Positions 1 through 60,265 of a DNA stretch of 64,000 nt are shown here, in pieces (position 1 is the stretch's first letter; every line of letters starts with the position of its first letter). Made by a program: the position numbers and the translations under genes. The DNA is taken from the IMG/VR virus record IMGVR_UViG_3300033145_003233, positions 62,001 through 126,000 of that record; one strand, given 5' to 3'. The notes under the pieces were generated by a model. That model was not told the origin of the DNA and did not search any database. It was given only the letters and a program-made list of their open reading frames with translations.

Positions 1-31
1 AAGTGAAAAGAATCATAGTATAATAGTTGCT

Positions 32-508
32 ATGAAAAAAGAATTTGTAATAATGCGTGGTCTTCCTGGCTCAGGTAAAAGCACCCTAGCTAAGCAATTA
101 GCAGGAACAAATGGTCAAATATTCTCTGCTGATGATTTCTTTATGGACACAGATGGAAACTATAATTTTGACCCTTCTAAATTAGGACAAGCTCATGAGT
201 GGAATTATAATAGAATCAGAGAGGCTATCAGCGCAGGGGCCTCCCCTGTTATCCTGGACAATACAAATGTTGCACAATGGGAGTTAAGGAAATTAAAACC
301 TCTCATAGAACATGCTACATTAAGAGGATACAAGTCAAGAATAGAAGAACCTCAAACTCCTTGGGCAATGGACCCAGAAGAACTTGCGAAAAGAAACACT
401 CACGGAGTTCCTCAAGAAGCTATTGAAGGAAAACTTAGAAAATGGGTTAAAGATCCCACAATAGAAGATATCCAAAGCAATTTTGGCATTCCTCAATCTC
501 CCCAATAA
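32..508 (+). CDS. P-loop kinase/ATPase, AAA_33 / N4BP2-like polynucleotide kinase
   Basis: Walker A MRGLPGSGKST; FSADDFF, HEWN and ILDNTN motifs typical of N4BP2-like kinases. Confidence 0.75.
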   Translation: MKKEFVIMRGLPGSGKSTLAKQLAGTNGQIFSADDFFMDTDGNYNFDPSKLGQAHEWNYNRIREAISAGASPVILDNTNVAQWELRKLKPLIEHATLRGYKSRIEEPQTPWAMDPEELAKRNTHGVPQEAIEGKLRKWVKDPTIEDIQSNFGIPQSPQ

Positions 509-565: not shown

Positions 566-1180
566 TTATTTACATTTTATCGCGTTAGCAAATAAATCTT
601 TTATTTTAACTTCTTCCATTTTATACCATCCGGTTGGCATATCATTAAAATATTGATTTATATATTGTTTATAAGAATTGAACCAGTTCTTTCTGTTTTT
701 TTCTGATGTTTTGTTTATTTTTTTTCGGCTAATTCCAGTCAAATATGTTGCATAGTCTTCTGCTTCTTTGTTTACATTATCAGAATCATTCTTATTGCAG
801 GAAGCAGGCCCCCAATGAAGCAACTTTCTATCTGAAGAAATGGCCCAACAGTCTACATTATATTTAGACAATTCTAAAAATTTCTTACTAAATTTTATAG
901 CTTGAGGATCATAACCTTGATTTTCTAAATTCTCGTCAGAACGACTTTCTTTAACTATTACATCATTTATAGCTATTAAGTCGCCAGAATTGAATTGAGT
1001 TTTAACTAAAACATCTATATCTCTAATTCTAAAATCTGAATTATCAATATTCTCAGCATAAGATCCCCAGAGATAAAGATCTTTAACTCCCTTTACTTTT
1101 CTAAAATCTTCTAACGCCCCTGATATGTGGGGCTTTATATCTTTTATCTTAGGCATACACTTTTCGTACCAAGAACTCAA
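566..1180 (-). CDS. Pol-beta superfamily nucleotidyltransferase-like protein
   Basis: LYLWGSY...IRDIDVLV matches the hG[GS]...DxD motif; TTG start. Confidence 0.6.
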   Translation of the reverse strand: MSSWYEKCMPKIKDIKPHISGALEDFRKVKGVKDLYLWGSYAENIDNSDFRIRDIDVLVKTQFNSGDLIAINDVIVKESRSDENLENQGYDPQAIKFSKKFLELSKYNVDCWAISSDRKLLHWGPASCNKNDSDNVNKEAEDYATYLTGISRKKINKTSEKNRKNWFNSYKQYINQYFNDMPTGWYKMEEVKIKDLFANAIKCK

Positions 1181-22581: not shown

Positions 22582-22584
22582 ATT

Positions 22585-23193: not shown

Positions 23194-23196
23194 CCT

Positions 23197-24117: not shown

Positions 24118-24759
24118 ATGGCAAAAGAAAAATACAAATACGAAAAAATATATCAGGGCAAAGGTGAATTCAAAAGAATTTATCAGCTAGATGGATCGGG
24201 AAAGAAACGAGAGATGTATGGACATAATAACCACGGTAAACAATATTTTAAGTTTATACTAAGAAAAGTTAAACCCACTTCGGTTGTAGATATAGGTTGT
24301 GGATATAATGAATTTTGTGAGATGCTGAAAGAAAAAGGAATAGAATCAGTAGGTGTTGACTTCGCCTGTCCCGGAGCCGACATAATGGCTAGTGCTGAAA
24401 ACCTTCCTTTTAGAGATGGGCAGTTTGATTTATTAACAGCATTCGATGTATTAGAGCATATACCAGAAGAAGAAATAGATACATCATTAAAAGAATTTGA
24501 GAGAATAGCTCATCGCTTTATGTATAAAATATGTTTAAGAAAAGATTTTAAAAAAATAGATGGAGAAACATTGCACCCCACAGTTAGATTCCCTGAATGG
24601 TGGATAGATAAAATTACAAAAAATGGTGGACATATAGGCCAAATAATATATTCTAATAAAAAAGGAATAATGCCAAAATGCAGGGCTAAAATATTAACCG
24701 TTTATGGATTTTTTCATGTAAAACCACCTCCTCCAAAAAGCAAATCATATTATGATTAA
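24118..24759 (+). CDS. Class I SAM-dependent methyltransferase (paralog 2)
   Basis: VVDIGCG, LPFRDGQFDLLTAFDVLEHIP; same MAKEKYKYEK start. Confidence 0.85.
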   Translation: MAKEKYKYEKIYQGKGEFKRIYQLDGSGKKREMYGHNNHGKQYFKFILRKVKPTSVVDIGCGYNEFCEMLKEKGIESVGVDFACPGADIMASAENLPFRDGQFDLLTAFDVLEHIPEEEIDTSLKEFERIAHRFMYKICLRKDFKKIDGETLHPTVRFPEWWIDKITKNGGHIGQIIYSNKKGIMPKCRAKILTVYGFFHVKPPPPKSKSYYD

Positions 24760-24770
24760 AGAAGAATAAG

Positions 24771-25322
24771 ATGGCAAAAGAAAAATATAAATATGAAAAA
24801 AGAATCAAAGAAATAAAATATTCTGACAAGGATAAAAAAAAGAACCATGGACTAAAAACAATGCCATTCATAAAAAATATTATCAAACCTTCTTCAGTTA
24901 TAGATGTTGGATGTGGGTGGAACTCGTTTTGCCATTTATTAAATGAAAAAGGGATAGAATCAGTTGGTGTTGATTTCGCTTGTCCAGGTGCAGATATTAT
25001 AGCAGATGCCGAATATCTTCCTTTTAAAGATGGGCAATTTGATTTATTAACAACATTTGATGTATTAGAGCATATACCAGAAGAAGAAATAAATATGGTG
25101 TTTCAAGAATTTAAAAGAGTAGCAAATAAATTTTTCTACCAAATATGTCTAGGAAGAGGAAAGAGACATATAACTCTTAAATCTCCCACATGGTGGCTAT
25201 TAAAAATAATAGAAAACCAAGGAGATATTGGACAAATAACATATTATGATGGGGCAAATAACATAGTCCCCAAAAATAAAGCAAGATGGATTACTGTTTA
25301 TGGTTTCTTTAATAAAAATTAA
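24771..25322 (+). CDS. Class I SAM-dependent methyltransferase (paralog 3)
   Basis: VIDVGCG, LPFKDGQFDLLTTFDVLEHIP; same MAKEKYKYEK start. Confidence 0.85.
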   Translation: MAKEKYKYEKRIKEIKYSDKDKKKNHGLKTMPFIKNIIKPSSVIDVGCGWNSFCHLLNEKGIESVGVDFACPGADIIADAEYLPFKDGQFDLLTTFDVLEHIPEEEINMVFQEFKRVANKFFYQICLGRGKRHITLKSPTWWLLKIIENQGDIGQITYYDGANNIVPKNKARWITVYGFFNKN

Positions 25323-25345
25323 TTTTCCAGATTGTCATTTTTTTC

Positions 25346-25374
25346 TTGACAAAACCTACAAAAAGTAGTATAAT
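25346..25374 (+). promoter_or_regulatory. Consensus sigma70 promoter upstream of the radical SAM gene and the MKIR array
   Basis: TTGACA-N17-TATAAT; shares AAAAGTAGTATAAT with the promoter at 4360. Confidence 0.85.
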
Positions 25375-25436
25375 AAACAATTCGAAAGTAGAGATATGGG
25401 GCAGTAGGAATGTAACCGCTTATGACAGAGGAAGTT

Positions 25437-26483
25437 ATGAAAATAATCGATAAAAAAGATAGAAAAGCTCTTTATTCACGGAATTATAATTTTGTTCTAA
25501 ATAAGAAAAATGGGCTTTTTATAAGATAGGGAAGGGCTTTAGGAGATGATCCTCAGTTCTCTCCATTTGGACCTGAAATTTTGGATTTAGAGATTTCCTC
25601 TGGTGGAGATTGTCTCGGAAATTGCCCCTTCTGTTACAAATGTAATGGTGGAGATCAACCTACTCACAATATGACTTTTATAGAGTTTAAGACAATCTTT
25701 GATAAGATGCCTAAAACTCTTACTCAGATTGCTTTTGGGATTATGAATATTAAAACTAATCCCGACTTCTTTAAAATGATGAAGTATGCTAAAAAGAATG
25801 GAGTTATTCCTAATTATACCTGTCATGGTTTGGATGTTACTCCTGAGATGGCAGAAAGAACTTCCAAACTTTGCGGAGCAGTAGCAGTTAGTCTTTTAAA
25901 TAAAAAGAAAACGTATAAGGCTATTAAGCTTTTTACTAGTTTCGGTATGAAGCAAGTTAATATTCATTATATGCTTAGTGAAGAGACTTATGATAAAGCA
26001 TTTGAGATTGTAGATGATTTGGCATCTGATTCTGACTTAAAGGATTTTAATGCTATTGTCTTTTTACAGTATAAATCAAAAGGCAGAAATCCAGATGATT
26101 TTACTTCTGTTCTGGACGTAGAAAAATATAAGAAGCTAACAGAATATTGCAAAGCAAGAAATATTCGCTATGGCTTTGACTCTTGCTCTGCTTCTATGTT
26201 TATAGATAGTTTGGAAGGACAACCTGATAAAAAGGTCACAGAGCTATTTGTAGAGCCTTGTGAGAGTGGATTGTTTAGCTCTTATATAAATTGTCATGGA
26301 AAATTCTTTGTTTGTAGTTTTGCTGAGGACGAAGATGAATGGATAAAAGGATTAGATGTTTTACATTGTGATGATTTTATGAAGGATATTTGGGACCATC
26401 CAAGACTTGTTGCTTGGAGAGAAAGATTGATAAAAAACAAAAGAGAATGTCCGATTTATGATTTATCTTTGGAGAAAGCATAA
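25437..26483 (+). CDS. Radical SAM protein with SPASM/twitch-like C-terminus; in-frame TAG at codon 31
   Basis: CLGNCPFC (CxxxCxxC), CESGLFSSYINCHG...VCSF, RECP; ATG at 25437 with GAGG SD is in frame, TAG at 25527-25529. Confidence 0.85.
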
Positions 26484-45085: not shown

Positions 45086-46333
45086 TTTAAGAGCTATTTT
45101 TATTATTCTTTTATAAATTAATATTTTCTTAAAGGTTTTTCTTATATATTCCGATAATATACATATATGAAACTAATTCGTACAATTAAACTTAAATTAA
45201 ATATACCTGAATCAGAGATATTACCTACTATTCAGGCATATACAAAAGCATATAATCTTGTATGCCAACAAGGTTGGCAAGATAGTGATTATAATGCTAT
45301 ATCTTTACACCACAAGACCTATAAAACCGTTAGAGAACAATTTAACCTTCCTTCTCAACTTGCTATTTCAGCTAAGACAAAGGCAACTGAAAGCCTTAAA
45401 TCCGTTAGAGCTAAAATTATTAAAAAGAAAAAGGCTACTCAACCATTCTCTAAACAGTGTTCTATTAGATACGACAAAAACTCTATTACTATCTGGTTCG
45501 ACAAAGAAAAGATTTCTCTTCTTACTATAAATGGTAGAAAAAAATTCTCTATTCAAGTTCCAGACTATTTTAAACAATATATTACTTGGAGAAAATGTTC
45601 TGCTGACCTCTTTATTAGAAACCATGTTGTTTTTCTTAATATAGTAGTTTCTACAGAAAAAACAGATATTCCTAAAATAGATACTTATGTAGGAATAGAT
45701 CGTGGTATTAAAAAAATAGCAGTAACATCTGAAAAACAATTCTTTAGTGGTTCTAAAATCAAACAAATTACAGATAAATACGAAAGATTTAAAAGCAAAC
45801 TGCAAAGTAAAGGAACTAAATCTGCAAAAAGACACCTTAAAAAACTTTCTAAAAAGGTTAACCGTTATCGCAGAGATGTTAATCATTGCATTGCTAAGCA
45901 AGTTGTTCAATCTGTGGCCCCAGGAAGCACTATCATTCTTGAAAAGTTGACGGGTATTCGTCAAAACGTTAGGTTGAGAAAAAAACAGAGAACAGAACTT
46001 CACAAATGGAACTTTTATCAGTTTGAACAGTTTCTGAAGTATAAAGCAGAAGAAAAGGGTACTCAGGTAGAATATGTCTCTGCCAGATATACTTCTCAAA
46101 AATGTAGTAAATGTGGTCATGTTTCTCGTTCTAATCGTAAAAACCAATCTCAATTTAAATGTACTCAATGTTCTTATCAATTAAATGCAGACTTAAATGC
46201 TGCTTTTAATATAAAACAAAATTATTTGGATAGTATATCTTACCCAAGTAGGGCTGATGTCAATCAGCCTATTGTAGCATCGTCATAATGACGATAGCTA
46301 TAAGCTTCTACCTTTATGGTAGAGACAATTGAT
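45086..46333 (+). mobile_element. Solo tnpB (IS1341-type, IS200/IS605 superfamily) element; left boundary uncertain
   Basis: tnpB with no tnpA nearby; right-end hairpins ending at CAATTGAT (46326-46333). Confidence 0.65.
45167..46288 (+). CDS. tnpB: RNA-guided endonuclease TnpB
   Basis: RTIKLKL; RuvC-I VGIDRGI; RuvC-II IILEKL; YTSQKCSKCGH...CTQC Zn finger; RuvC-III NADLNAAFNI. Confidence 0.92.
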   Translation: MKLIRTIKLKLNIPESEILPTIQAYTKAYNLVCQQGWQDSDYNAISLHHKTYKTVREQFNLPSQLAISAKTKATESLKSVRAKIIKKKKATQPFSKQCSIRYDKNSITIWFDKEKISLLTINGRKKFSIQVPDYFKQYITWRKCSADLFIRNHVVFLNIVVSTEKTDIPKIDTYVGIDRGIKKIAVTSEKQFFSGSKIKQITDKYERFKSKLQSKGTKSAKRHLKKLSKKVNRYRRDVNHCIAKQVVQSVAPGSTIILEKLTGIRQNVRLRKKQRTELHKWNFYQFEQFLKYKAEEKGTQVEYVSARYTSQKCSKCGHVSRSNRKNQSQFKCTQCSYQLNADLNAAFNIKQNYLDSISYPSRADVNQPIVASS

Positions 46334-51008: not shown

Positions 51009-51269
51009 TTACAAATCCAATATATCAAATCTACTTTCTATTTCATGGGACTCAGGATTCTCTGCCCAATCATCTAAGCCATCTACTTCCTGTTTCCTTC
51101 TCAACAATTCTTCTCTTACCATTTTGATTTTTGAGCGATTTCTAGCTCCTTGCCCGGCATCGCAATCGAAAAACCTAATAACATTTTTTAAATGCTCAGT
51201 CGTCATTTTCCTGACAGGGATTTTACGTCCGTCTTTAGTTGTCCAAATCTGTTCTTCTGCCATTATCAA
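51009..51269 (-). CDS. Hypothetical protein with C-terminal SRFDILDL motif
   Basis: WTTKDGRKIPVRKMTTEHLKN...ESRFDILDL. Confidence 0.6.
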   Translation of the reverse strand: MIMAEEQIWTTKDGRKIPVRKMTTEHLKNVIRFFDCDAGQGARNRSKIKMVREELLRRKQEVDGLDDWAENPESHEIESRFDILDL

Positions 51270-51496
51270 TCAAAATGTGCAAATGTTTTTCCACGAGTAG
51301 GGTGCTTACTAACTGAGTCATTTACCATTTTCCTAAACTTACCTTCTGCTTCTATAATAGCTGCATCACTTACTCTTGTGCAGTCCCAGCCCAACCTATG
51401 GGTTTTACAACGCTCTTTAATATATGCCTTAAGTCCTGCCCGATTTAACAAGCTATTTATTTTCTTTCTCCTCTTCTTTTCCATTTTAATCTCCAT
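51266..51496 (-). CDS. Small basic protein
   Basis: 76 aa ORF. Confidence 0.55.
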   Translation of the reverse strand: MEIKMEKKRRKKINSLLNRAGLKAYIKERCKTHRLGWDCTRVSDAAIIEAEGKFRKMVNDSVSKHPTRGKTFAHFD

Positions 51497-51734
51497 TATT
51501 TTCTTCTGTTAAGACTTCATACGAAAAGTCTTCCAAATCTTCTTTAGCAAAATAGAAATAACCTGTATGTTCTGTCCATATATACAGATATTTTTCATCT
51601 TCTTCTACATAAGCACAAGTCAATTCAAAATATGACTCATCCAAATGCTTTATCTCAACATAGTATTTAAAGTCCTTGTCGCTTCGGAGATCCTTATCCT
51701 TCTTCTCCATAAAAGCTACTATGCTCTGATTCAT
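51486..51734 (-). CDS. Hypothetical protein
   Basis: 82 aa ORF downstream of two promoters. Confidence 0.6.
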   Translation of the reverse strand: MNQSIVAFMEKKDKDLRSDKDFKYYVEIKHLDESYFELTCAYVEEDEKYLYIWTEHTGYFYFAKEDLEDFSYEVLTEENNGD

Positions 51735-51943: not shown

Positions 51944-52255
51944 TTATCTTCTATGTAAATGGGTTATGGCTCCCCTGTGCTTGCCTATTTGTAATTGTAT
52001 CTTTTTCTTTTGCTCATCTGACAACATAGGATTTTTTAATTGCTCTTCTAGTTCTGCAATAGCATCTTGATTAATATATATTTTACGCCATTTGTCAAAT
52101 CTCTTTTTTCCTCTATCAATAAGAAGCTCTTCTTCATCTTTCTGTCTCCATTTTGATAGCTGATCATCGTCATAATTATCTTCTCCCTTATAATATGACA
52201 TATCTCTATCAGAGGGATAGAGCCAACGATTCTGTGATTTCTTATACCAGTTCAC
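51944..52255 (-). CDS. MNWYK-family protein
   Basis: GTG start overlapping the upstream TGA gives (M)NWYKKSQNRW. Confidence 0.65.
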   Translation of the reverse strand: MNWYKKSQNRWLYPSDRDMSYYKGEDNYDDDQLSKWRQKDEEELLIDRGKKRFDKWRKIYINQDAIAELEEQLKNPMLSDEQKKKIQLQIGKHRGAITHLHRR

Positions 52256-52422
52256 CTGTACGGTTTCCTTAATCTCCCTGTGGGAGTGCATATCCCAACT
52301 CTTACTAAAAGCTCTAAGGCTTTCTCTGGATTGTCCTTCATTTCTTTTCTTTTTTCTCTACACCACTTTTTAAAATTTCTTAATTCTTGTTCTGGTGTAG
52401 GTCTAAATCTGTTTTTGATCAT
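52252..52422 (-). CDS. Small basic hypothetical protein
   Basis: MIKNRFRP...GICTPTGRLRKPYR. Confidence 0.5.
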   Translation of the reverse strand: MIKNRFRPTPEQELRNFKKWCREKRKEMKDNPEKALELLVRVGICTPTGRLRKPYR

Positions 52423-52891
52423 CCCAAAATCTCCATAATTCACCTAAAAATTGATACTGATAAGCAAACTCTTCTGCTTCTCTTTCGTCCATATCGAAGT
52501 TAATTCCTTCTTGTATTCCATGTGCCAACTCATGTAGTATAGACATTTCTAAATCACTTTTCAACTCAGAACCATATTCTGTAGCAATTTCTCTGGTTCT
52601 TTCTATGTCTATAAGGATAACAACCCATGGTTGTGTCCCGCTTATATATCGTGCTATCATCTCCTTTCCATCATTCTGAACAAAACCAACTTTGATATCT
52701 TGAATAAATCCTATTTGTGGTAATAATTCTTTTTTTAATTTGTTTATATATTGTTCTACATATTGGACTATTTGTTGATCTGGGTTGTTATTCATCTCAT
52801 AGTCCCAGTTAGGATCATAATCATGCTCTGCTCCAGGATATTCCCATTTAGGAGATTCTTCAAATTGTTGAGATTTTTTATACCAATTCAT
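52403..52891 (-). CDS. MNWYK-family protein with HExxH metallopeptidase-like motif
   Basis: MNWYKKSQ start; ILHELAHGIQE. Confidence 0.7.
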   Translation of the reverse strand: MNWYKKSQQFEESPKWEYPGAEHDYDPNWDYEMNNNPDQQIVQYVEQYINKLKKELLPQIGFIQDIKVGFVQNDGKEMIARYISGTQPWVVILIDIERTREIATEYGSELKSDLEMSILHELAHGIQEGINFDMDEREAEEFAYQYQFLGELWRFWDDQKQI

Positions 52892-54464
52892 ATTTACCTA
52901 TTTGCTTTTTATTTTTATACCAATTCCCAGTCATAGCAATTGTAGGTTGTGGATTTTGTTGTTTTTCCATTTCTTTTCTTTTTCTCTCTATGTCAAAAAG
53001 TGCTTGAGCACTAGGTATTATGCCTTGTTCTCTATAATCTTTTATTTCATTTAATAAATCTTTTGCAAAACCACCTTCAAGACTTTGCCCTAACCATTCG
53101 TCATGTATATCTGCTTCTGCTTCTTGGAATGCCTCCATAGCTTCTTCATACTCTTCTGGAGTTTCATAATTTTCTTGATGAGGATAATCTAATCCACTTT
53201 CATACTGCATAAAAGTATCTTCTACTTCGTCTATTTGCTTCCATGCCCATCGCTCTACTTCTTGTATGTGTTTCCAGTCTGTTTGTTTTGGATTATTAAC
53301 AATCATATCGTTATATTCTTGGCTGTGCCTTGGCCAACTTTCCAACTCTAGATCTTCTTTCAGAGCAAGATTAACAATAGTTGGAGGAGATTCAGTAATA
53401 TCTCCAGAATATTGATTATCTCTATTTGTGCTTTTTGCCTGAGTTAGAATGCCATCAAGAACTGTTTCTATATCAGAATCAAAAATATATCTTAATCCAT
53501 ATTCATTTTCTGTTCCTTGAAGAATGCTATCTATTGCTCCATTAATATCTGAGATATTTGCACTATCATAAGCATGATAATCTTCTAATTCTTCAAATGA
53601 ATTAATTTCTCTGTTGATTCCTATTTCTTCTCCTCCAGTAGATATCCATTCTTTTATCATGGCTTTAGATGCAGCATCTGGTTCCTGATTTGAGTTACCT
53701 TGAATTTGTTGCCAGCTGCCTGGAGAATATCCACTTGCTCCCCCTATCTCGATTGTAGCATGGGGATGATTTTGAGGATCTCTTAGAGAGTAAATAACAG
53801 TTTCCCCTCTCTCAACATCATTACAATAACTTCCCACACAATGATTCATCTTATTTCCTTCTGCCAATAAATCATTTTCACTTTCTACTCTTTGAATTGT
53901 CCATCCTGCCCATTCCGGGTTTGTCCATTGCGGACCATACTCAATCTGAGCTTTTCTAGTTGGTTCATATTCTTTACCAGTGCCTTGTCCTGCCATCATC
54001 CTGTGCCATTCATCTGAATGCTCTAATGCCTCTTGAAAAGAATAAGAGGATATATCTGGTTTAGGAATAGATCTTTGACTCCAGTCATATATCTCTTGTA
54101 ATTTATTAGAAATAGTATCGAGATTTCTATCTGACAGAAGAGAGTCAGCCTTACTAGGATCTGATATTCTTATTTTTCTAAAATTAACTAAAATCCATTT
54201 TTGTATTTCTGGGAATCTTTTTGCTATTGTTTTTTCTTTAATAGAATAAGGATCTTGTTTCTGAGGAAGTTGCATTTGTTGTAATTCCACAATAGTTAAC
54301 TGAGGATTTTTTCTTACTTCATTTGTAAGAAGTTGAGCAGTTGAAATGTCTAATGATAAAATATAGTTAAGAACATCTTGTCCAACTCCAAGTGTTCCTA
54401 AGTATCTTGCCATGCCTCCTACCGGAGCGGCTTGAGATAATATTGTTTTGAAATACTAATTCAC
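52878..54464 (-). CDS. MNWYK-family PcfJ-like domain protein; probable GTG start with TAG at codon 3 (tracked ORF starts at 54413)
   Basis: SDEWH, LLAEGNKMNHCVGSY, IYSLRD (PcfJ-like); upstream GTG AAT TAG TAT in frame; C-terminal GNWYKNKK. Confidence 0.7.
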
Positions 54465-54937
54465 TATAGCTTAACCTTATGCATAGCCCTAGTGAGCATA
54501 CTATTAATTCGATTAGGAGAATGTCCTTCTCTTTTTAACAGTCGAGTATATTCATTAATGCCTGCCCAATCTTTTTTCACATATAAATCTTTTAATTTAG
54601 CTACAAGCTCCCCTTCTACTACCTCATTATCACTAATAATATCTGTCATAACAGAGGAACCAGGTCTGTGCTCATCCCCCTGCTCTTGGCCTGGATATCG
54701 TGGACCGCGGGCGGCTTCTTTTTTTTCTAATTTCTCTTCCATCTTATCTAATTCTGTATAATAAGTAGGGAATTCTTCCAGATGGTCCATAGCTATATCT
54801 TTAGCAAGCTCTTTATCTTTAGTATGTTCTAATTCTATTTCCTCACCGCGAGAAAGTTCTTTTTGATTAAAATCAGAAGGCTTCTTCTTGTCTGCTAATC
54901 CTCCTGGTAAATTTTTTGCTTGTTTATACCAGTTCAT
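54464..54937 (-). CDS. MNWYK-family protein with DUF5661-like domain
   Basis: MNWYKQAK; GGLAD...IELEHT...IAMDHLEEFPTYY. Confidence 0.7.
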   Translation of the reverse strand: MNWYKQAKNLPGGLADKKKPSDFNQKELSRGEEIELEHTKDKELAKDIAMDHLEEFPTYYTELDKMEEKLEKKEAARGPRYPGQEQGDEHRPGSSVMTDIISDNEVVEGELVAKLKDLYVKKDWAGINEYTRLLKREGHSPNRINSMLTRAMHKVKL

Positions 54938-54945
54938 AATAATCC

Positions 54946-55563
54946 TTACTTATATTTTAGTAAAATATAATTTTGAGTTTCTGTAGGAGAATGTGCTATC
55001 CAATCTTCCCCATATTTTTCCCATGCATTTTTTACATTTCCTATTCCCCAATCATAAGATCCTAACCTTGTTTCAATATTATCAGGTATATTATAATATT
55101 TTAACATTTGAGGGATTCTTTGATTAAGATAATAATCGGCCACTTGGCTACTTTTATTATAATCCATAGATCCATTCCACCAATCCCAGTTTTTCCCCAT
55201 TCTACTCATCATCTCATTCCAAGTTTTTTCTAAAAATTGAAAATGCCCCCTAGCTCCTGCTTTGCTTCTGTCCATATTGGGATCTTGCCCGCTCGATGAT
55301 TCTATCCCCCATATTTTATTAATATCAATATTTATAGGGGCATTTTCTACTTGTTGGACCTGTGGTTCTTGTGGCGCTTGTTTTTCCTGTTGAGCTTGTT
55401 GAACTTGTTGGGTTAATTCTTGAGGATTTTCTTTAATCCGATTTTCAATATCAAAAACAGATACGCCCAATAATAAAGCTATAGCAGGAACAGCCAAAAA
55501 TCCGAAAGCTGTCCATAATCCCTTAGCTTCTTTATTCATTTGTGCTTTTTTGTACCAATTCAT
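54946..55563 (-). CDS. MNWYK-family lytic transglycosylase (SLT/lysozyme-like) with one TM helix
   Basis: MNWYKKAQ; IESS (catalytic Glu), GARGHFQF..KTW, SYDWGIGNV, ETQNY. Confidence 0.8.
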   Translation of the reverse strand: MNWYKKAQMNKEAKGLWTAFGFLAVPAIALLLGVSVFDIENRIKENPQELTQQVQQAQQEKQAPQEPQVQQVENAPINIDINKIWGIESSSGQDPNMDRSKAGARGHFQFLEKTWNEMMSRMGKNWDWWNGSMDYNKSSQVADYYLNQRIPQMLKYYNIPDNIETRLGSYDWGIGNVKNAWEKYGEDWIAHSPTETQNYILLKYK

Positions 55564-57707
55564 TAGGCAGAGATCCTTTTTCTATACCAATTATAACCCA
55601 ACTTCATTAAGACATAAGGTTGTATATCACCAGGAACTTTGTTCATCAATGCCTCAAAATTTGATGGTTGTCTATTTAGCATATTAGCATAATATTGTGC
55701 TGTTTCATCTATCAACTCAGCCGGTAAGTATGTTCTAACATTTTCTGGAACACTCATCCAAAATTGATGAAGCATACCTGGATATCTGCCCTTATTTCTA
55801 GCAAAAGCTTGACCTATATCTGCTCCATAAGTTTTCAAAAGAGCATCTTGAATATCGGGGGTCAAACTTTTCCAATAACCAGGGTCTCTCATAACATGAT
55901 TCTTTTTCTCTTCTAACAGATACCCTACTTGACCTACATCTTGCCCGCCTAAAATATCATTTTTATACTGAGGAGGCACATAGTCCATCCATTCAGGATG
56001 CCTTCTTAAAGCACCTTTAAAAGCTTCTACTATTTGCTCTCTAGTTATTAGCCCCATAGTTACTAATTTTTCCGCTCTTTGTAGTTTATCATATTTTCCG
56101 CGAGCTTGAGAAACAGGGAATTTGGCAAAATCTGCAAGAACATGTTTTTCAATTTCTCCGGCATCAAATAATTGCAAAATTTGAGGAAACATATAATCAA
56201 TATGCTCTGGATTTCTTTGTAATAATTCTGCCCACTCTGTTTTTAGATTATTTAATGGAAAATTCTGTTTAATATCACTAGGTATTCTCTTATCGTTATA
56301 ATGATAAGGATCTTGACCTATATAGTTATGCCATGCTGAAACCTGTTCCTGTTCAGAAAACATTTTCTGGATGTCAGGAGAAAATTCTGGAAAAAGAATA
56401 GGATTATGGTAAAAGGCACTTTTATGAGCTTGTAAAATACGAGGTTTCATATCCCCTAAAGCATTTCTTACTTCCTCTGGAATACGCCTATAATAATCTT
56501 GAAACGATTCAAATTTTCTTAAATATTCATCAGGCTGTACCCCTACTCCCTCTATTTCCAGAAGCCTATCATTTATTTTTATAGAATATCCTTCTTTAGC
56601 AGCCGTTAAAAATTCTGGGAAATTTGCTCTGTTTTTTTCACTTACTGAACGATATTGATTAGGGTCGTCTTTAATTATCCCCATAATATAATTAATTTTT
56701 TCTGTATCACCCTTTTCAATATCAGCATTCATCAACATTGTTTTTTCAAGGGTTTTATATTGAGCACATTCTTTATAGTCTAGGCCGCTTTGTGATAAAA
56801 AGTTAACAACTGGCTCCCAGTAAGGAGTTAGATTTTCATCTTTATTATGATGACCTCTAATTTCAGATACTCTATTCCCGACTAATCTTACCGCCACTGT
56901 AGCCTTACCATCTACTAGATATAACCAAAAATCTCCTTGTGATAGATATGGTCTAGCCTGACCGCATGCTGTACACCATCCAGTTCCTGTGCTAAATCTT
57001 TTTAACTTGTCTGCATTAGCCTCAAAATTTTTAGAATCTGCTGATTTAGATGGAATTCTTATCCACTCTCCACCTTCTTTAGTTCCTATCTTTTCTACAG
57101 ATTTTTTATCTACATCGGAAGCAAGCTTACCATACCTTTTAAGGATATTCATTTGGGTAGAACCTTGAGTAGTTAATTCATCCCATACTAATCCTAGAGC
57201 TTCAGCATTGATAGGTGGAGGAGCAGCCTTTTTTGTTTCGGGAGAACTATCGAAGATGGGTTTAAGAATAGAAAAAGCAAATGCTGGATTTTCTTTGTAT
57301 ATATCATTTTCTTTAGTTAGATATTCCCACCAATCAGAAAATACTTTCTTCTTATCATCATTAACTACTTTTAGAATTTTTTCTTTCGCTCCTTGAGGAT
57401 CTGCCTGATAAATTCTCATAGCTATTTGTACTTCAGGATTATTTGGATCTTGAGCAAACTCTCTTTCCAAATTTATATCTTTTACATAATTGTTGTTATC
57501 TGAAGAAGGGTCTATCTTAGATTGTAGGGAAGGAAGAAATTCAGTTGATATAATGTTTTCTAAATCTTCTTTGGTTTTTATTTTATTCCAGTCAACAAGC
57601 TTTTCATATTTATAGACAAACAACTTGAGAGCAGGATTAGCTATTCCTAACTTATTAATCTTATCTTTAGCACCAGCAAGTTTTGTTAGTTTTTTATGCC
57701 AATTCAT
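55563..57707 (-). CDS. Large MNW(H)K-family protein with GTGWCTA domain
   Basis: MNWHKK start; STGTGWCTA...GDFWLY...EIRG; C-terminal YNWYRKR. Confidence 0.7.
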   Translation of the reverse strand: MNWHKKLTKLAGAKDKINKLGIANPALKLFVYKYEKLVDWNKIKTKEDLENIISTEFLPSLQSKIDPSSDNNNYVKDINLEREFAQDPNNPEVQIAMRIYQADPQGAKEKILKVVNDDKKKVFSDWWEYLTKENDIYKENPAFAFSILKPIFDSSPETKKAAPPPINAEALGLVWDELTTQGSTQMNILKRYGKLASDVDKKSVEKIGTKEGGEWIRIPSKSADSKNFEANADKLKRFSTGTGWCTACGQARPYLSQGDFWLYLVDGKATVAVRLVGNRVSEIRGHHNKDENLTPYWEPVVNFLSQSGLDYKECAQYKTLEKTMLMNADIEKGDTEKINYIMGIIKDDPNQYRSVSEKNRANFPEFLTAAKEGYSIKINDRLLEIEGVGVQPDEYLRKFESFQDYYRRIPEEVRNALGDMKPRILQAHKSAFYHNPILFPEFSPDIQKMFSEQEQVSAWHNYIGQDPYHYNDKRIPSDIKQNFPLNNLKTEWAELLQRNPEHIDYMFPQILQLFDAGEIEKHVLADFAKFPVSQARGKYDKLQRAEKLVTMGLITREQIVEAFKGALRRHPEWMDYVPPQYKNDILGGQDVGQVGYLLEEKKNHVMRDPGYWKSLTPDIQDALLKTYGADIGQAFARNKGRYPGMLHQFWMSVPENVRTYLPAELIDETAQYYANMLNRQPSNFEALMNKVPGDIQPYVLMKLGYNWYRKRISA

Positions 57708-57708
57708 T

Positions 57709-60138
57709 TTATAATTTTGGTTTATATTCGTTATAAGTTCTTTTCAATACTCTTACCACTGCTCCCCTACCATGAGATGCATTCATTGCTTTTAAACTTT
57801 TTATATATTGAGCAGTAGCATTTGCATCTTGAAATTTAGGAGAAATCTGTGCCATAAGCTCAAAAAATTTCTCTATCACTTCATCAACATTTCTATTTTC
57901 TTTTATAATTCTTTGTTCTGCTAGTTCTCCGAGGTCATATTTGCCAAACCAAGAAGGTAAACCAGCAGGCTTTTCAGGGATAGCTTCAGGGATAGCTTCA
58001 GGAAGAGCTTCAGGAGGAGCTTCAGGTGCGGCCGCAGGATCAACTATTTCTAATTTCTTTATTTGGGTATTTCTATAACGAGCATTAGTAGGTCCTTTGA
58101 TTCCCTTCACATATATTTCTTCTCCCTGTTGTGCTCCACCCCATGGCTCACGATTAGTAAATAGAATATACTTGCTTGCATCTCGACCCCTAAACTCATT
58201 TAGATAATTAGTATATCCTCCACGCTGGAATGGTCTAGAGCTTACAAACTTAAGATGAGCAGTAAAGGTAGAACCTTCATCTACTTCTGTTATATTGTCT
58301 ACTCCAGCAGGTCCTTCTGGTTCAGGCGTAGGAACAGGAGCAGCTATTTGCTCAGGAGCAGCTACTGGTTCAGGCGTAGGAACAGGAGCAGCTATTTGTT
58401 CAGGAGCAGCTACTGGTTCAGACTCTTGAATCGGTGCAGGCTCTAAAGTAATTTGATTGGCCTCTAAATACATCCTAACCATTGCGAGAAGATTCCTTAA
58501 ATTTTTATCTTTTAATCCTATAGTACTAACAATACTTAAATTAACTTTATTTCTACCATCATCATAATCTTCTAAATCTAAACCCCCAACTTTATCCATC
58601 CACCATCTTCTTGCTTCCTTACCTATTCTAAAATCTTCTTCAGAAATATCGGGGGCCTTTCCATAATACCTCCCTCTCTGTTGCGCATTTGGATCATAAC
58701 CTGGCTTGGCCATTTCGTCCTGTTTCCGTTCATAGGAACGAGCACCTCTCCATAGGCTATTTAATAATCTATAATCTCGATCTTGTGCGGCAGGAGTTCT
58801 TAACAAATGAATAGCAGTAGCAAATAACACATCAGAACCGATACTACCATATCCCCATCCTCCTCCTTTATGTTTCTTCTTAGCTTTTGCTTTTTCATAT
58901 TCTTCTCTATATTTTCTTGCACTATTAACCCATCTTTTAAGATTATTAATTGTTTTTACAGCATCAAATGGATCAATACATTTACCCCCGAATTGTTGTT
59001 GTTGAGCGTTTTCTATATCTTCATCTCTAATAACCTTAACAGGTTGTTGTTCTGTTTGTCCACTTTGTCTATTTGTAACATTTCTCATCATAACTTGCTC
59101 TTGCCCATCTGGTCCTCTCATCGTCTTATTCTTCATTTGAGATTGAGGGACTACAACGCCAACGTAAGTGGCCTTTCTTGCTGTAGCTCCTGCTTTTTTA
59201 ACCTGACAAGCATGACAATATTGAGGAGAACTATACCAGAACTGACCATCTAATGGTGGAGCGCCCTCTAATGCTTCAACTTGATTAAAATATGGGGTTT
59301 CCCTTTTAGTCCTGCTCTGTTCAATAACTCCTCTTAATGGAGAATCAGCAGGTAGGGTTTGAAGATAATGCTGTTGTCTTTCTTCGTCTATAGGTATATG
59401 AGTTATTTTAGCAACTAATCTCACTCCAACAGGTTCATAACCATCAAAATTCCATTTCGTTGAACCGTCCCTTGCTGTTGTTGCCTTATATTTTTTAATT
59501 CTAATTACTTCGGAAGGACTTGGAAGAGTTCCAGATACCTTAACTCTTACAAAATCTTCTTTATATGTTCCATTTTGCCATTTAACTGGTTTAGGATATG
59601 GATCAGAAATTTGAACACTAATCTCAGGATAAAACATGTCCTTTAATCTTTTATTAGTCGTGTTTAGTCTTTTAATTAAAGTATTAACTCTGGCAGATGG
59701 AATCTCGAATGTCTCTAATAATGTTGGGTCAGAAGTTACTTTTTCTTCTAAACTAGGAGGAGTGTCTAACTGTTGAGTTAATGGAGCGCCTCCCACTTCT
59801 TCGTCTGCTGCCCCTTGCTCTCCTTCCTTCCCATCAGGCTCAATTACCTCTTCAGGAGGAGCCTGTGCTCTCTGTACATCAACCGGAGTAGGAACAGGCT
59901 CTTCTCCTACATCCATTCCTTGTAAATGAGTCATTAATCCATTGGGATCTCCTACAAGACCCCATAATTGAGGGTCCCTAAAAGCAGGATCTTCTATTGA
60001 CATTTCTCCTATAAATTGATTAATAATTTGAACAACATCTCCACCTTCTTGCAATGATTGCAACGCTTTATTTCTTATATCTGCTTTAGATGCTTCTTTG
60101 CCAAAAATACTCTTTGTTCTTTGTCTATACCAATTCAT
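57709..60138 (-). CDS. Large MNWYR-family protein with Pro/Ala-rich repeats
   Basis: MNWYRQR start; CHAC motif; PEPVAAPEQIAAPVPT repeats. Confidence 0.75.
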   Translation of the reverse strand: MNWYRQRTKSIFGKEASKADIRNKALQSLQEGGDVVQIINQFIGEMSIEDPAFRDPQLWGLVGDPNGLMTHLQGMDVGEEPVPTPVDVQRAQAPPEEVIEPDGKEGEQGAADEEVGGAPLTQQLDTPPSLEEKVTSDPTLLETFEIPSARVNTLIKRLNTTNKRLKDMFYPEISVQISDPYPKPVKWQNGTYKEDFVRVKVSGTLPSPSEVIRIKKYKATTARDGSTKWNFDGYEPVGVRLVAKITHIPIDEERQQHYLQTLPADSPLRGVIEQSRTKRETPYFNQVEALEGAPPLDGQFWYSSPQYCHACQVKKAGATARKATYVGVVVPQSQMKNKTMRGPDGQEQVMMRNVTNRQSGQTEQQPVKVIRDEDIENAQQQQFGGKCIDPFDAVKTINNLKRWVNSARKYREEYEKAKAKKKHKGGGWGYGSIGSDVLFATAIHLLRTPAAQDRDYRLLNSLWRGARSYERKQDEMAKPGYDPNAQQRGRYYGKAPDISEEDFRIGKEARRWWMDKVGGLDLEDYDDGRNKVNLSIVSTIGLKDKNLRNLLAMVRMYLEANQITLEPAPIQESEPVAAPEQIAAPVPTPEPVAAPEQIAAPVPTPEPEGPAGVDNITEVDEGSTFTAHLKFVSSRPFQRGGYTNYLNEFRGRDASKYILFTNREPWGGAQQGEEIYVKGIKGPTNARYRNTQIKKLEIVDPAAAPEAPPEALPEAIPEAIPEKPAGLPSWFGKYDLGELAEQRIIKENRNVDEVIEKFFELMAQISPKFQDANATAQYIKSLKAMNASHGRGAVVRVLKRTYNEYKPKL
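57973..58026. repeat. 12-bp tandem repeat within CDS (PEAx)
   Basis: TTCAGG(GAT/AAG/AGG)AGC x4.5. Confidence 0.8.
58319..58421. repeat. 48-bp tandem duplication within CDS
   Basis: GGTTCAGGCGTAGGAACAGGAGCAGCTATTTG(C/T)TCAGGAGCAGCTACT x2 plus a partial copy. Confidence 0.85.
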
Positions 60139-60265
60139 TTAGATATCCCTTACTGTAATCGCACACTGTCTGTAGAAATATGTTTCTATATTCGATAAAA
60201 ATCTCCAAAATCCTATATATATTTCTGAAAGGATTTTTATACCATAAAAACGAATAATAAGTATT

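What the first reader, a model, noticed from the sequence alone, without database searches (positions are those of the whole stretch)
51944..60138. Seven unrelated proteins share an MNW(Y/H)K/R terminal tag: candidate capsid-packaging or ejection signal
Seen: consecutive minus-strand genes start (M)NWYKKSQ, MNWYKKSQ, (M)N*YFKT, MNWYKQAK, MNWYKKAQ, MNWHKKLT and MNWYRQRT. Two also carry the motif at the extreme C-terminus (TGNWYKNKK; GYNWYRKRISA). The tagged bodies are unrelated: HExxH peptidase-like, PcfJ-like, DUF5661-like, lytic transglycosylase, GTGWCTA domain, and an 809-aa Pro-rich protein. The nucleotidyltransferase at 566..1180 starts MSSWYEK, a possible variant. Established: T4 internal proteins are packaged through a short N-terminal capsid-targeting sequence (MKTYQEFIAE) that the prohead protease removes. 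Inference: NWYK/R is an analogous portable sorting signal for proteins injected with the genome, and it may work at either terminus.
Basis: partly seen in the sequence, partly recalled or inferred. Interest (0 to 1): 0.8.

Follow-up and report, generated by a model that had tools for sequence, protein, structure and literature searches.

The report
Portable NWYK address tag, huge phage
One clade of uncultivated, mostly huge phages puts the same eight-residue peptide (M-N-W-Y-K-K-A-Q) on the front of dozens of unrelated small enzymes, most likely as a label that loads them into the virus head for injection with the DNA, like phage T4's capsid-targeting sequence but with a new, undescribed motif.

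Summary
Six consecutive minus-strand genes (60138 to 51944) start (M/V)NW[YH][KR]. A seventh (PcfJ-like) has the same start with a stop at the Trp codon. The window expects 0.015 such starts.

The tag, M-[NSGA]-W-[YF]-[KR]-[KQR]-[AS]-[QK], is selected as a peptide:
- It is invariant in orthologues down to 30-45% identity.
- Its synonymous sites vary.
- Position 4 changes only among aromatic residues.
- It also occurs in frame at module junctions.
- AlphaFold gives both tags of the 714-aa protein pLDDT below 50 on a confident body.

I found 138 distinct tagged proteins in 71 unrelated families, including SLT, PcfJ, DUF5661/5662, ART-PolyVal, GNAT, Acb1-like, Tad6, HicA and AAA_33 kinase. All come from uncultivated phage contigs. 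Eleven of the 28 tag-bearing IMG/VR contigs, including this one, share one major capsid protein at 65-93% identity.

The same cargo families carry T4-type capsid-targeting leaders in other phages or sit inside polyvalent proteins. The best explanation is therefore a clade-specific capsid-targeting tag for injected accessory proteins (confidence about 0.5). No virion data exist. The "C-terminal" copies are junction tags. The MSSWYEK variant is not supported.

The parts
57709..60138 (-). First gene of the cluster. 809-aa Pro-rich multidomain protein; tag MNWYRQRT at 60138-60115.
   Evidence: All 10 homologues start M[NGSA]W[YF][KR]. AF2 mean pLDDT 70, with residues 1-14 below 50. Weak OB-fold-like matches only.
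60189..60214 (-). Conserved upstream element AGGAWTTY-N4-WTTTTTRTMGAATR, about 50 nt before the 809-aa gene. Probably the cluster's promoter; its class is unknown.
   Evidence: Conserved upstream of the orthologous clusters in L021, L029 and L024. The only zero-mismatch match in the window.
55563..57707 (-). 714-aa protein with an N-terminal tag MNWHKKLT (57707-57684) and a second, junction tag NWYRKRISA (55592-55566) at its C-terminus.
   Evidence: About 45 homologues keep both tags. AF2 mean pLDDT 89, but residues 1-10 and 706-714 are below 50. Foldseek gives weak PcfJ-like and PA5oct 'structural protein' matches.
54946..55563 (-). 205-aa lytic transglycosylase (SLT). Tag MNWYKKAQ (55563-55540), then a transmembrane helix, a Gln/Pro-rich linker and the SLT domain.
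   Evidence: Pfam SLT. 34 aligned homologues have M1 N2 W3 Y4 invariant at a mean column identity of 47%. Hydrophobic segment.
54464..54937 (-). 157-aa DUF5661 protein; tag MNWYKQAK (54937-54914).
   Evidence: Pfam DUF5661, E = 1e-10. The family is tagged in 7-12 relatives.
52878..54464 (-). PcfJ-like gene. A vestigial tag (GTG AAT TAG TAT TTC AAA, 54464-54447) is broken by a stop at the Trp codon (54458-54456). The ORF restarts at ATG 54413 (511 aa). A junction tag NWYKNKK lies at 52925-52905, followed by only 15 residues.
   Evidence: Pfam PcfJ, E = 8e-11. Orthologues start MNWYLK/MNWYIK/MNWYKI and carry the internal tag about 98 residues before their end. TAG is a normal stop here.
52403..52891 (-). 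162-aa protein with an HELAH motif; tag MNWYKKSQ (52891-52868).
   Evidence: No Pfam or PHROG match.
51944..52255 (-). 103-aa protein with a GTG start; tag (M)NWYKKSQ (52255-52232). Last gene of the cluster.
   Evidence: The GTGA overlap with the upstream 63-aa ORF (52252..52443) is read from the sequence. GTG-started tags also occur in L021, L028 and L135.
1..508 (+). 3' part of another tagged gene, an AAA_33 P-loop kinase of 177 aa starting MNWYKKTV. Its tag lies 26 nt before the window start. It is the last gene of a second tagged cluster in the same genome (L124: 124 aa, 713 aa, ART-PolyVal 180 aa, kinase).
   Evidence: L124 overlaps window 1-1511. Pfam AAA_33 E = 7e-16 and ART-PolyVal E = 8e-15.

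Best explanation
The peptide M-[N/S/G/A]-W-[Y/F]-[K/R]-[K/Q/R]-[A/S]-[Q/K] is a clade-specific, portable address tag. It is a short, flexible linear motif, probably a short amphipathic helix when bound. Genes acquire and keep it as a cassette made of the tag plus a protein module.

The most likely job (inferred, not shown) is to dock accessory proteins to a component of the assembling head, so that they are packaged and delivered with the DNA. The candidate receptors are conserved in this clade: the 290-aa major capsid protein, the 187-aa protein next to it, or the 1,700-2,500-aa fusion protein with an N-terminal head-maturation protease domain. The cargo comprises cell-wall hydrolases, ADP-ribosyltransferases, acetyltransferases, Acb1-like and Tad6 anti-defence proteins, HicA, kinases, PcfJ-like proteins and many unknowns. 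This makes it a functional analogue of the T4 capsid-targeting sequence and the P1 DarB N-terminal signal, with an unrelated sequence.

Shown:
- the tag exists;
- it is selected at the peptide level;
- it is modular and sits at module junctions;
- it is restricted to one capsid clade;
- it is predicted to lie outside the fold;
- its cargo overlaps known injected-protein families.

Inferred:
- the head is the destination;
- the identity of the receptor;
- whether the tag is later removed.
For: 1. Peptide-level selection.
- M1, N2, W3 and Y4 are invariant in 34 SLT homologues whose mean column identity is 47%.
- Both tags are kept in about 40 homologues of the 714-aa protein, down to 30-37% identity.
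- All 10 homologues of the 809-aa protein are tagged.
- Synonymous sites vary roughly as in gene bodies, and position 4 is only Y, F or H.
- Nothing is conserved upstream of the ATG apart from a ribosome-binding site.

2. Portability.
- 138 unique tagged proteins fall into 71 BLAST-unrelated families when the tag is masked.
- Runs of 4-9 consecutive tagged genes occur.
- Fusions keep an internal tag exactly at the module boundary. Examples are the L124 713-aa protein and its 124-aa paralogue, and 714-aa family members followed by lysozyme, DUF5661 or other modules.

3. Same cargo, different leader.
- ART-PolyVal relatives are mostly domains of 1.5-4.3-kaa polyvalent proteins.
- Solo ART-PolyVal forms carry MNWYK, or nothing, or T4-like leaders. 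P0142 starts MKTFKQYFVE and sits in a T4-like contig whose neighbours start MISFKKYVLQE and MSFKEYLLNE. T4 ipII and ipIII start MKTYQEFIAE.
- SLT homologues in other myovirus contigs start M.ELLEQL[LI].E.
- A domain tagged with NWYK in L135 carries a different shared leader in L134.

4. The cargo mixes enzymes that act in the periplasm (SLT, Hydrolase_2, lysozyme) with enzymes that act in the cytoplasm (ART, GNAT, Acb1-like, Tad6, HicA, kinase, DnaJ). The virion is the obvious place they could share.

5. Precedent. T-even internal proteins are diverse defence proteins that share only a conserved CTS (PMC3012670). The CTS is 10 residues long, and Alt is processed at both termini (PMC9026906). 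[quoted passage not shown] Polyvalent proteins are predicted to be packaged in the phage head (PMC5512222).

6. Clade restriction. 11 of the 28 IMG/VR contigs found by the tag's DNA pattern are among the top 80 relatives (65-93% identity) of one MCP, including this contig. In L135 nine tagged genes lie next to the MCP and protease genes. Tagged genes lie 2-6 kb from the MCP in this genome.

7. AF2 places the tags as low-confidence appendages on well-predicted bodies.

8. Only 3 of 71 families have a hydrophobic segment, so the tag is not a secretion signal.
Against: - There is no direct evidence of virion location. No cultured phage carries the tag and no literature mentions it.
- In this window the cluster sits among non-structural genes: glycosyltransferases, methyltransferases, ligase, RNase H.
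- No conserved protease site follows the tag. No [LI]-x-E appears, and nothing is conserved beyond residue 8.
- Portal, protease fusion, the 187-aa protein and the MCP carry no tag.
- Clade restriction is also what plain shared ancestry would give.
- Some tagged proteins are large (up to 1,235 aa) or look like DNA-binding or HNH-type proteins, which are not obvious ejection cargo.
- The Ala7 codon is GCA in 89% of cases against 34% in gene bodies, so some constraint at the nucleotide level exists.
Confidence: 0.5

Rival explanations
1. The tag is a docking motif for some other shared partner, not the capsid. It could be a phage chaperone or hub, an intracellular compartment or membrane site, or a host machine (ribosome, RNA polymerase, nucleoid) to which all these effectors are recruited.
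For: - Everything that shows a portable, flexible peptide-level motif fits this reading equally well.
- The same lineage has further shared terminal motifs: a C-terminal [SND]RF[DE]ILD[LI] tail on 14 unrelated families and M[RK]VIRT[AS]G[WY]K in L134. This suggests a general system of address labels rather than a single packaging signal.
- The cluster in the window is not next to head genes.
Against: - Periplasm-acting wall hydrolases and cytoplasm-acting enzymes share the tag, which is hard to reconcile with one intracellular destination.
- Homologous cargo carries T4-type capsid-targeting leaders in T4-like phages.
Confidence: 0.2
2. The tag is an N-terminal degradation or processing signal (a ClpXP-type or other protease recognition motif). 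It would time the removal of early effectors, or direct cleavage of fused modules.
For: - The N-terminal pattern polar-aromatic-aromatic-basic resembles N-terminal ClpX recognition motifs (own knowledge, not tested).
- Relatives encode a ClpP-family protease 5-9 kb from the cluster, and the window encodes an FtsH-like protease.
- Tags sit exactly at junctions of fused modules, where a processing site would be useful.
Against: - An invariant Trp and an eight-residue consensus are far more stringent than known degrons.
- A cleavage site at residues 2-8 of a stand-alone protein would release nothing.
- The tag is also on a membrane-anchored periplasmic enzyme.
- Internal and C-terminal copies cannot act as N-terminal degrons.
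Confidence: 0.1
3. The conservation is mainly at the nucleotide level. ATGAATTGGTATAAAAAAGCACAA would be a start cassette that promotes translation initiation or coupling, or acts as a recombination junction for shuffling gene cassettes. The peptide would be a by-product.
For: - The tag's bases supply stops in both other reading frames. 52 of 138 tagged genes overlap the upstream gene in this way: 27 with ATGA, and 25 with TAA in codons 4-5, which gives upstream proteins ending in ..ELV.
- The start region is A-rich and codon 7 is biased to GCA.
- Nearly identical 24-mers at many gene starts would favour cassette exchange (inference).
Against: - Synonymous positions vary about as in gene bodies.
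- The only replacements at codon 4 keep an aromatic residue.
- Position 2 varies N/S/G/A while W stays invariant.
- In-frame copies are conserved at C-termini and junctions, where no initiation occurs.
- There is no conserved RNA context upstream.
This is probably a contributing side-effect, not the cause.
Confidence: 0.08
4. Chance, or simple paralogy: one gene family duplicated in tandem.
For: The genes are adjacent, and several families do have paralogues.
Against: - 0.015 starts are expected against 6 observed.
- With the tag masked there are 71 unrelated families with different Pfam domains.
- Alignment of 40 representatives shows 6% mean column identity, with only M1 and W3 invariant.
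Confidence: 0.01

Closest known systems
Phage T4 capsid-targeting sequence (CTS) of internal proteins IPI/IPII/IPIII and Alt
   Same: - A short N-terminal peptide is the only thing shared by otherwise unrelated, fast-evolving accessory and anti-defence proteins.
- It is portable.
- Large cargo (Alt) has propeptides at both ends, as the 714-aa family has tags at both ends.
- The ART cargo family is shared between the two systems (PMC3012670, PMC9026906).
   Different: - The sequence is unrelated (MKTYQEFIAE against MNWYKKAQ).
- No L/I-x-E protease site follows the NWYK tag.
- NWYK also occurs internally at module junctions.
- The head module is not T4-like: a 290-aa MCP and a giant protease-fusion protein.
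- Function is untested.
Phage P1 DarB N-terminal capsid-targeting signal
   Same: An N-terminal signal (residues within the first 30) is sufficient in P1 to load an anti-restriction protein and a reporter into the head (PMC9024508).
   Different: In P1 it is known for one protein, not as a motif shared by dozens. There is no sequence similarity.
Polyvalent proteins of phages and conjugative elements (Iyer et al. 2017)
   Same: The domain repertoire overlaps: ART-PolyVal, zincin-like HExxH, wall hydrolases. The tagged ART's nearest relatives are domains inside polyvalent proteins. Those proteins are predicted to travel with the DNA (PMC5512222).
   Different: Here the domains are mostly separate small proteins, each with its own tag, rather than fused into one giant polypeptide. 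Occasional fusions keep the tags as junctions.
Encapsulin cargo-loading peptides
   Same: A short, disordered terminal peptide on unrelated cargo docks inside an HK97-fold shell and can sit at either terminus (own knowledge).
   Different: The consensus differs, the peptides are usually C-terminal, and the shell is a bacterial nanocompartment rather than a virion.
Sel1-like repeat, helix A (..WY[KR]KAAEQG..)
   Same: The hexamer WYKKA[AQ] is the start of the Sel1 repeat consensus. Most hits to the tag's DNA pattern in bacterial genomes are internal Sel1 repeats. This suggests the tag can form a similar amphipathic helix.
   Different: Nothing beyond residue 8 matches the repeat. No tagged protein hits Pfam Sel1. 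The similarity is probably convergent, or only a structural hint.

Membership tests
T4-type capsid-targeting sequence (CTS) | A short N-terminal peptide is shared by otherwise unrelated accessory proteins of one phage. | tested here: met
   71 unrelated families share the 8-mer. There are 6-7 tagged genes in the window.
T4-type capsid-targeting sequence (CTS) | Sequence resembles MKTYQEFIAE. | tested here: not met
   T4 ipII and ipIII N-termini were read from NC_000866. The tag consensus MNWYKKAQ is unrelated.
T4-type capsid-targeting sequence (CTS) | Ends in a prohead-protease site (L/I-x-E) and is removed on maturation. | tested here: not met
   No conserved [LI]-x-E or other motif occurs after residue 8. 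Actual processing cannot be tested with these tools.
T4-type capsid-targeting sequence (CTS) | Necessary and sufficient to load proteins into the prohead. | not testable with these tools
   No cultured member exists. This needs a reporter-packaging experiment.
Classical secretion signal (Sec, Tat or lipoprotein signal peptide) | A hydrophobic h-region follows a basic n-region. | tested here: not met
   Only 3 of 71 families have a transmembrane-like segment, and SLT is one of them.
Sel1-like repeat proteins | Tandem repeats of about 36-44 residues that match the Sel1 profile. | tested here: not met
   No Sel1 hit in any scanned tagged protein. The similarity is limited to WYKKA[AQ].
Polyvalent proteins | 2-15 effector domains in one polypeptide, including ART-PolyVal or MPTase. 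| tested here: inconclusive
   Domain membership is met for the ART (Pfam ART-PolyVal E = 8e-15; relatives lie inside 1.5-4.3-kaa proteins). The architecture is not met: most are solo proteins of median length 162 aa.
PcfJ-like proteins (PF14284) | Match to the PcfJ profile. | tested here: met
   The 511-aa ORF scores E = 8e-11, above the cut-off. The 714-aa protein shows only weak fold-level similarity and no profile match.
Encapsulin cargo-loading peptide | The terminal peptide binds the interior of an HK97-fold shell. | not testable with these tools
   No multimer prediction or binding assay was available.

The most novel reading that the evidence does not exclude
These phages run a multi-label protein-addressing system. 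NWYK at N-termini, [SND]RFDILD[LI] at C-termini and further leaders such as MRVIRTAGW would be distinct 'postcodes'. Each would send sets of unrelated proteins to a different destination: the head interior, the replisome or clamp, a phage-built compartment, or a host target. NWYK need not be the capsid label at all. That would be a form of intracellular sorting not described for phages.
Probability: 0.15. Interest if true: 0.9.

Novelty: new variant of a known kind. Interest (0 to 1): 0.75.

Why it matters
- If the tag is a packaging signal, it gives a sequence-only way to read out the full set of injected proteins of an entire clade of uncultivated huge phages. Here that set is dozens of counter-defence and host-takeover enzymes per genome, most of unknown function.
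- It would show that the T4 'CTS plus diverse cargo' strategy evolved independently, with a different peptide, in a different head lineage.
- It offers a new eight-residue handle for loading foreign proteins into phage heads.
- It would explain how such phages can swap effector cassettes quickly, because the tag's DNA also supplies start and stop signals and recombination homology.
- Even if the destination is not the capsid, a strictly conserved portable tag on 71 unrelated families is a clear and testable sorting signal.

Tried and rejected
- Literature. Full-text searches for MNWYK, MNWYKK, NWYKKAQ, MNWFK and MNWYR found nothing relevant. 'NWYK' alone only hit author names. Searching PcfJ + phage + virion found nothing useful.
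- Cultured phages. tblastn of the 714-aa, SLT, ART and P0142 proteins against 50,697 phage records found no tagged homologue. Matches start after the tag.
- Host assignment. The tag's DNA pattern in 185,579 genomes gave 77 hits, mostly internal Sel1 repeats. True tagged clusters appeared only on short MAG contigs (Halanaerobium and Saccharibacteria bins), which is unreliable for assigning a host.
- TAG recoding as an explanation for the broken PcfJ tag: rejected.
- Signal peptide or membrane anchor: rejected.
- Fold searches.
  - 714-aa model: no significant PDB match, and only weak BFVD matches.
  - 809-aa model: only weak OB-fold matches.
  - PDB sequence searches were empty.
  - hhalign of the 714-aa family against the PcfJ ORF found nothing.
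- Promoter class. A conserved upstream element exists, but it has only one perfect copy in the window, so no regulon or timing could be inferred.
- Tags on core head proteins (portal, protease fusion, 187-aa protein, MCP): none.
- My first regex for T4-like leaders was too strict. An unbiased comparison of N-termini gave modest support: 13 high-scoring pairs against 1 in five loci.

Full report
WHERE THE WINDOW COMES FROM. The 714-aa gene maps with 100% identity to IMG/VR contig IMGVR_UViG_3300033145_003233, which is 547,943 bp long. The window is therefore part of an uncultivated huge-phage genome. Its G+C content is about 33%, and genes switch strand near 38 kb. Most of the window is non-structural. 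It encodes an NAD-dependent ligase, an FtsH-like protease, a protein kinase, a block of glycosyl-, sulfo- and methyl-transferases with a radical-SAM protein, a DNA methylase, RNase H, a TnpB-type transposase and two tRNAs.

THE OBSERVATION. On the minus strand, seven back-to-back genes run from 60138 to 51944. Six begin (M/V)NW[YH][KR]:
- 809 aa, MNWYRQRT
- 714 aa, MNWHKKLT
- 205 aa, MNWYKKAQ
- 157 aa, MNWYKQAK
- 162 aa, MNWYKKSQ
- 103 aa, GTG start, (M)NWYKKSQ

The seventh is the PcfJ-like gene. It has GTG AAT TAG TAT TTC AAA in frame, 17 codons upstream of the ATG that now starts the 511-aa ORF, and that ATG has its own GGAGG. Orthologues read MNWYLK, MNWYIK or MNWYKI there. TAG is a normal stop in this genome. 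This copy has therefore lost its tag through a stop at the Trp codon, or through a sequencing error. The window holds 6 start+tag patterns against 0.015 expected. Only two other six-frame matches to the motif exist in the 64 kb; one (42989) is in a non-coding frame and the other (59584) is antisense to the 809-aa gene, inside the cluster's span. Pfam confirms PcfJ, DUF5661 and SLT, and the other four proteins have no family.

THE TAG IS SELECTED AS A PEPTIDE. Several lines of evidence agree.
- Of 45 database relatives of the SLT protein, about 36 start MNWY[KR], even at 40-45% identity. In the alignment of 34 of them, M1, N2, W3 and Y4 are invariant, the next ~12 residues are free, and the mean column identity is 47%.
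- All 10 relatives of the 809-aa protein start M[NGSA]W[YF][KR].
- About 40 of 45 relatives of the 714-aa protein have the N-terminal tag.
- The consensus over the 74 unique tagged proteins found in the first 755 kb of related loci is M, N, W, Y(F), K, K/Q/R, A/S, Q/K, with nothing conserved beyond residue 8.
- Synonymous sites vary about as in gene bodies: AAT/AAC 76/24 against 85/15, TAT/TAC 90/10 against 84/16, and AAA/AAG 91/9 against 82/18.
- The codons seen at position 4 are only TAT, TAC, TTT, TTC and CAT, so the residue stays aromatic.
- Upstream of the ATG only a ribosome-binding-site signal is enriched (34% against 9%), and no other base is conserved.
- One hint of nucleotide-level constraint remains: Ala7 is GCA in 89% of cases against 34% in gene bodies.

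THE TAG IS PORTABLE. I pooled the window, loci around SLT relatives and loci found by scanning IMG/VR for ATGAAYTGGTAYAAAMRRGC. This gave 138 unique tagged proteins. With the first 8 residues masked they fall into 71 BLAST-unrelated families. An alignment of 40 representatives has 6% mean column identity, with only M1 and W3 invariant.

Runs of consecutive tagged genes are common: 9 in L021, 9 in L135, 6-7 in L134/L118, and 4-5 in L108, L120, L128, L130, L106 and L148. Median protein length is 162 aa, and only 3 families have a hydrophobic segment.

The recognisable families are SLT, PcfJ, DUF5661, DUF5662, ART-PolyVal, GNAT acetyltransferases, AAA_33 kinases, the 2H/Acb1-like family, Tad6, HicA, DnaJ, PolyA_pol, Hydrolase_2, HTH proteins and DUF1841.

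THIS GENOME HAS AT LEAST THREE TAGGED SETS.
- The cluster in the finding.
- A second cluster that ends at the window's first ORF. L124 overlaps window 1-1511, and its genes start MNWYKRSQ (124 aa), MSWYKKAQ (713 aa), MNWYKKAN (ART-PolyVal, 180 aa) and MNWYKKTV (AAA_33 kinase, cut by the window edge).
- Two tagged genes 2-6 kb from the major capsid gene: a 208-aa multi-HTH protein and a 78-aa HicA.

THE 'C-TERMINAL' COPIES ARE JUNCTION TAGS. In the 714-aa family a second [NS]W[YF][KR] sits at residue ~705-735, the end of the conserved module, in nearly all homologues. In short members it is followed by 5-15 residues, as here (..GYNWYRKRISA). In longer members a further module follows it: a lysozyme (P0062), DUF5661 (P0075), the 63-aa 'HSLDIHC' module (P0048) or the 124-aa 'KLYQKFP' module (P0074, P0076) (alignment A3).

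The L124 713-aa protein has an internal TNWYKKSQLSTIDV, and the 118 residues downstream of it are a paralogue of the neighbouring 124-aa tagged protein. PcfJ relatives carry the internal tag about 98 residues before their end, ahead of a module that also exists as separate tagged 90-aa proteins. In the window that module is missing, which leaves NWYKNKK plus 15 residues.

Over all loci the motif is 3.4 times denser in the last 25 residues than in protein interiors. However, 4 of the 8 cases (5 if L024's 603-aa protein, whose tag lies 28 residues from its end and so falls outside that count, is added) belong to one family. The tag therefore travels with its module, and a free N-terminal Met is not required. 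Whether a junction or C-terminal copy is functional is open.

STRUCTURE. AF2 of the 714-aa protein (30-sequence alignment) has mean pLDDT 89, yet residues 1-10 and 706-714, which are exactly the two tags, fall below 50. In the 809-aa model residues 1-14 are below 50 and drawn as a helix. The tags thus behave as flexible appendages outside the fold, as expected for a linear docking motif.

Fold searches added little. The 714-aa body is an all-alpha solenoid with a small beta domain. It has weak BFVD matches to PcfJ-like proteins and to a 'structural protein' of jumbo phage PA5oct (E = 4e-3, TM 0.2-0.25), and nothing significant in the PDB. The 809-aa protein has an OB-fold-like domain at non-significant E-values.

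SAME CARGO, OTHER LEADERS.
- The tagged ART of this genome has 1,188 relatives in the 1.84-billion-protein library. Most top hits are domains inside 1.5-4.3-kaa polyvalent proteins.
- Solo forms start with MNWYK (P0091, P0153), with no leader (M.VYHGS), or with T4-like leaders. P0142 starts MKTFKQYFVE and lies in a contig with Cpn10/gp31-, gp46/47- and topoisomerase II-like genes. Its neighbours start MISFKKYVLQE and MSFKEYLLNE. T4 ipIII and ipII start MKTYQEFIAE.
- More distant SLT relatives lie in myovirus contigs, with tail sheath and tube genes a few kb downstream. They lack NWYK, and together with several neighbours they start M.ELLEQL[LI].E or similar. N-termini in those five loci resemble each other more than internal segments do, with 13 high-scoring pairs against 1.
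- A 109-residue domain that is 45% identical between L135 and L134 carries MNWYKKAQ in one and MRVIRTAGW in the other.

Leaders are evidently exchangeable modules on the same cargo, and one class of them is experimentally established as a capsid-targeting signal (PMC9026906, PMC3012670). P1 DarB is a second precedent (PMC9024508).

ONE CAPSID CLADE. In L135 the nine tagged genes abut a major head protein (phrog_2522, E = 2e-66) and a 1,842-aa protein with an N-terminal head-maturation protease domain. That MCP has 114 relatives in IMG/VR. The best 80 are 65-93% identical and include 11 of the 28 contigs recovered by the tag's DNA pattern. Among these are this 548-kb contig and contigs of 488, 476, 461, 296 and 122 kb.

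The head module of this genome is portal, a 1,868-aa protease fusion, a 187-aa protein and a 290-aa MCP (L241). None of these carries the tag. The tag is thus a trait of one head lineage. That fits a lineage-specific receptor, but shared ancestry would produce the same pattern.

INTERPRETATION. The shared tag on periplasm-acting hydrolases and cytoplasm-acting enzymes argues against a destination inside the host cell and for a shared earlier station. So does the overlap with families known or predicted to be injected (T4 Alt-type ARTs, polyvalent-protein domains; PMC5512222). The assembling head is the obvious candidate for that station. I put this at about 0.5.

The rivals are a different common partner (0.2), a degradation or processing signal (0.1) and a mainly nucleotide-level start, coupling or recombination cassette (0.08). 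The last of these probably contributes. The tag's bases provide TGA and TAA in the two other frames, and 52 of 138 tagged genes overlap the upstream gene in this way, which is why many upstream proteins end in ..ELV.

No virion data, cultured member or publication exists for this motif. The destination therefore remains an inference.

VERDICT. The 'either terminus' idea should be restated as 'tags mark module junctions', and the MSSWYEK variant should be dropped. I classify it as a new variant of a known kind, a CTS-like portable targeting peptide, with high interest.

Noticed in passing
window 51009..51269 (-); L024 (10 genes), L029 (5), L021 (2), L036 (1): There is a second portable terminal motif in the same phage lineage. 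The extreme C-terminus [S/N/D]RF[D/E][I/L][L/M]D[L/I] occurs on 18 unique small proteins from 14 BLAST-unrelated families. The window's 86-aa protein ends ..ESRFDILDL. From my own knowledge it resembles clamp-binding C-terminal tails of T4 replication and transcription proteins; this was not tested.
   Followed up: partly
window 1..508 (+) and L124 320-3922: The window's first ORF is the 3' part of an NWYK-tagged AAA_33 kinase. Just upstream of the window lies a second tagged cluster: a 124-aa protein, a 713-aa fusion with an internal tag, and a 180-aa ART-PolyVal.
   Followed up: yes
L134 1298, 3020, 4483, 6763 (+): Four genes of a related 134-kb phage contig share another N-terminus, M[RK][VTI][IV][RK]T[AS]G[WY]K. 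One of them is 45% identical over 109 residues to an NWYK-tagged protein of L135, so the same cargo carries a different leader.
   Followed up: partly
L007, L008, L009, L011, L016, L010 (genes around the SLT homologue): In myovirus contigs without NWYK, the SLT homologue and several neighbours start with an amphipathic M.ELLEQL[LI].E or MFNELYENL type leader. It is reminiscent of the T4 CTS and ends in an [LI]-x-E-like site. Tail sheath and tube genes lie a few kb downstream.
   Followed up: partly
window 52878-52891, 54464; many loci: Upstream genes often end inside the next gene's tag. ATGAATTGGTATAA read in the other frames gives TGA (a 4-nt overlap) or ..GAA TTG GTA TAA, so many upstream proteins end in ..ELV. 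This applies to 52 of 138 tagged genes.
   Followed up: yes
window 60189-60214 (-) and 51878-51850 (-): A conserved element, AGGAWTTY-N4-WTTTTTRTMGAATR, lies about 50 nt upstream of the first cluster gene and is shared with L021, L029 and L024. A perfect extended sigma-70 consensus promoter (TTGACA-17-TATAAT with TG) lies just downstream of the cluster, ahead of gene 51486..51734.
   Followed up: partly
L136-L212 (bacterial genome contigs): The hexamer WYKKA[AQ] is the start of the Sel1-like repeat consensus (..MNWYKKAAEQG..AQ.NLG..). Most genome hits to the tag's DNA pattern are internal Sel1 repeats. Start-type tag clusters occur only on short MAG contigs: L148 in a Halanaerobium bin (5 genes) and L181 in a Saccharibacteria bin (2 genes).
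   Followed up: partly
L241 (same contig, contig coordinates 666-21520): The head module of this phage is unusual. The portal has an HNH-like insertion. A 1,868-aa protein carries an N-terminal head-maturation protease domain (1,700-2,500 aa across 72 relatives). The 290-aa MCP is followed by a LAGLIDADG homing endonuclease. A 1,188-aa collagen-like tail fibre protein lies nearby.
   Followed up: partly
window 54458-54456 (-): The Trp codon of the PcfJ gene's tag is a TAG stop, and the ORF resumes at ATG 54413 behind a GGAGG. This is a natural loss of the tag from one cargo, or a sequencing error.
   Followed up: yes
window 57709..60138 (-): The 809-aa first gene has three Pro-rich disordered linkers, including a repeated PEQIAAPVPTPEP stretch, and an OB-fold-like beta domain near residues 624-698. 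It has weak, non-significant matches to ssDNA-binding OB folds, including PrgE of pCF10.
   Followed up: partly
window 45167..46288 (+), 3493-3564, 7146-7218, 18528-26483: The window also holds an IS605/TnpB-type transposase gene, tRNA-Gly(GCC) and tRNA-Gln(CTG), and a block of capsule-synthesis, glycosyltransferase, sulfotransferase, methyltransferase and radical-SAM-like genes. This suggests that the phage modifies a glycan.
   Followed up: no
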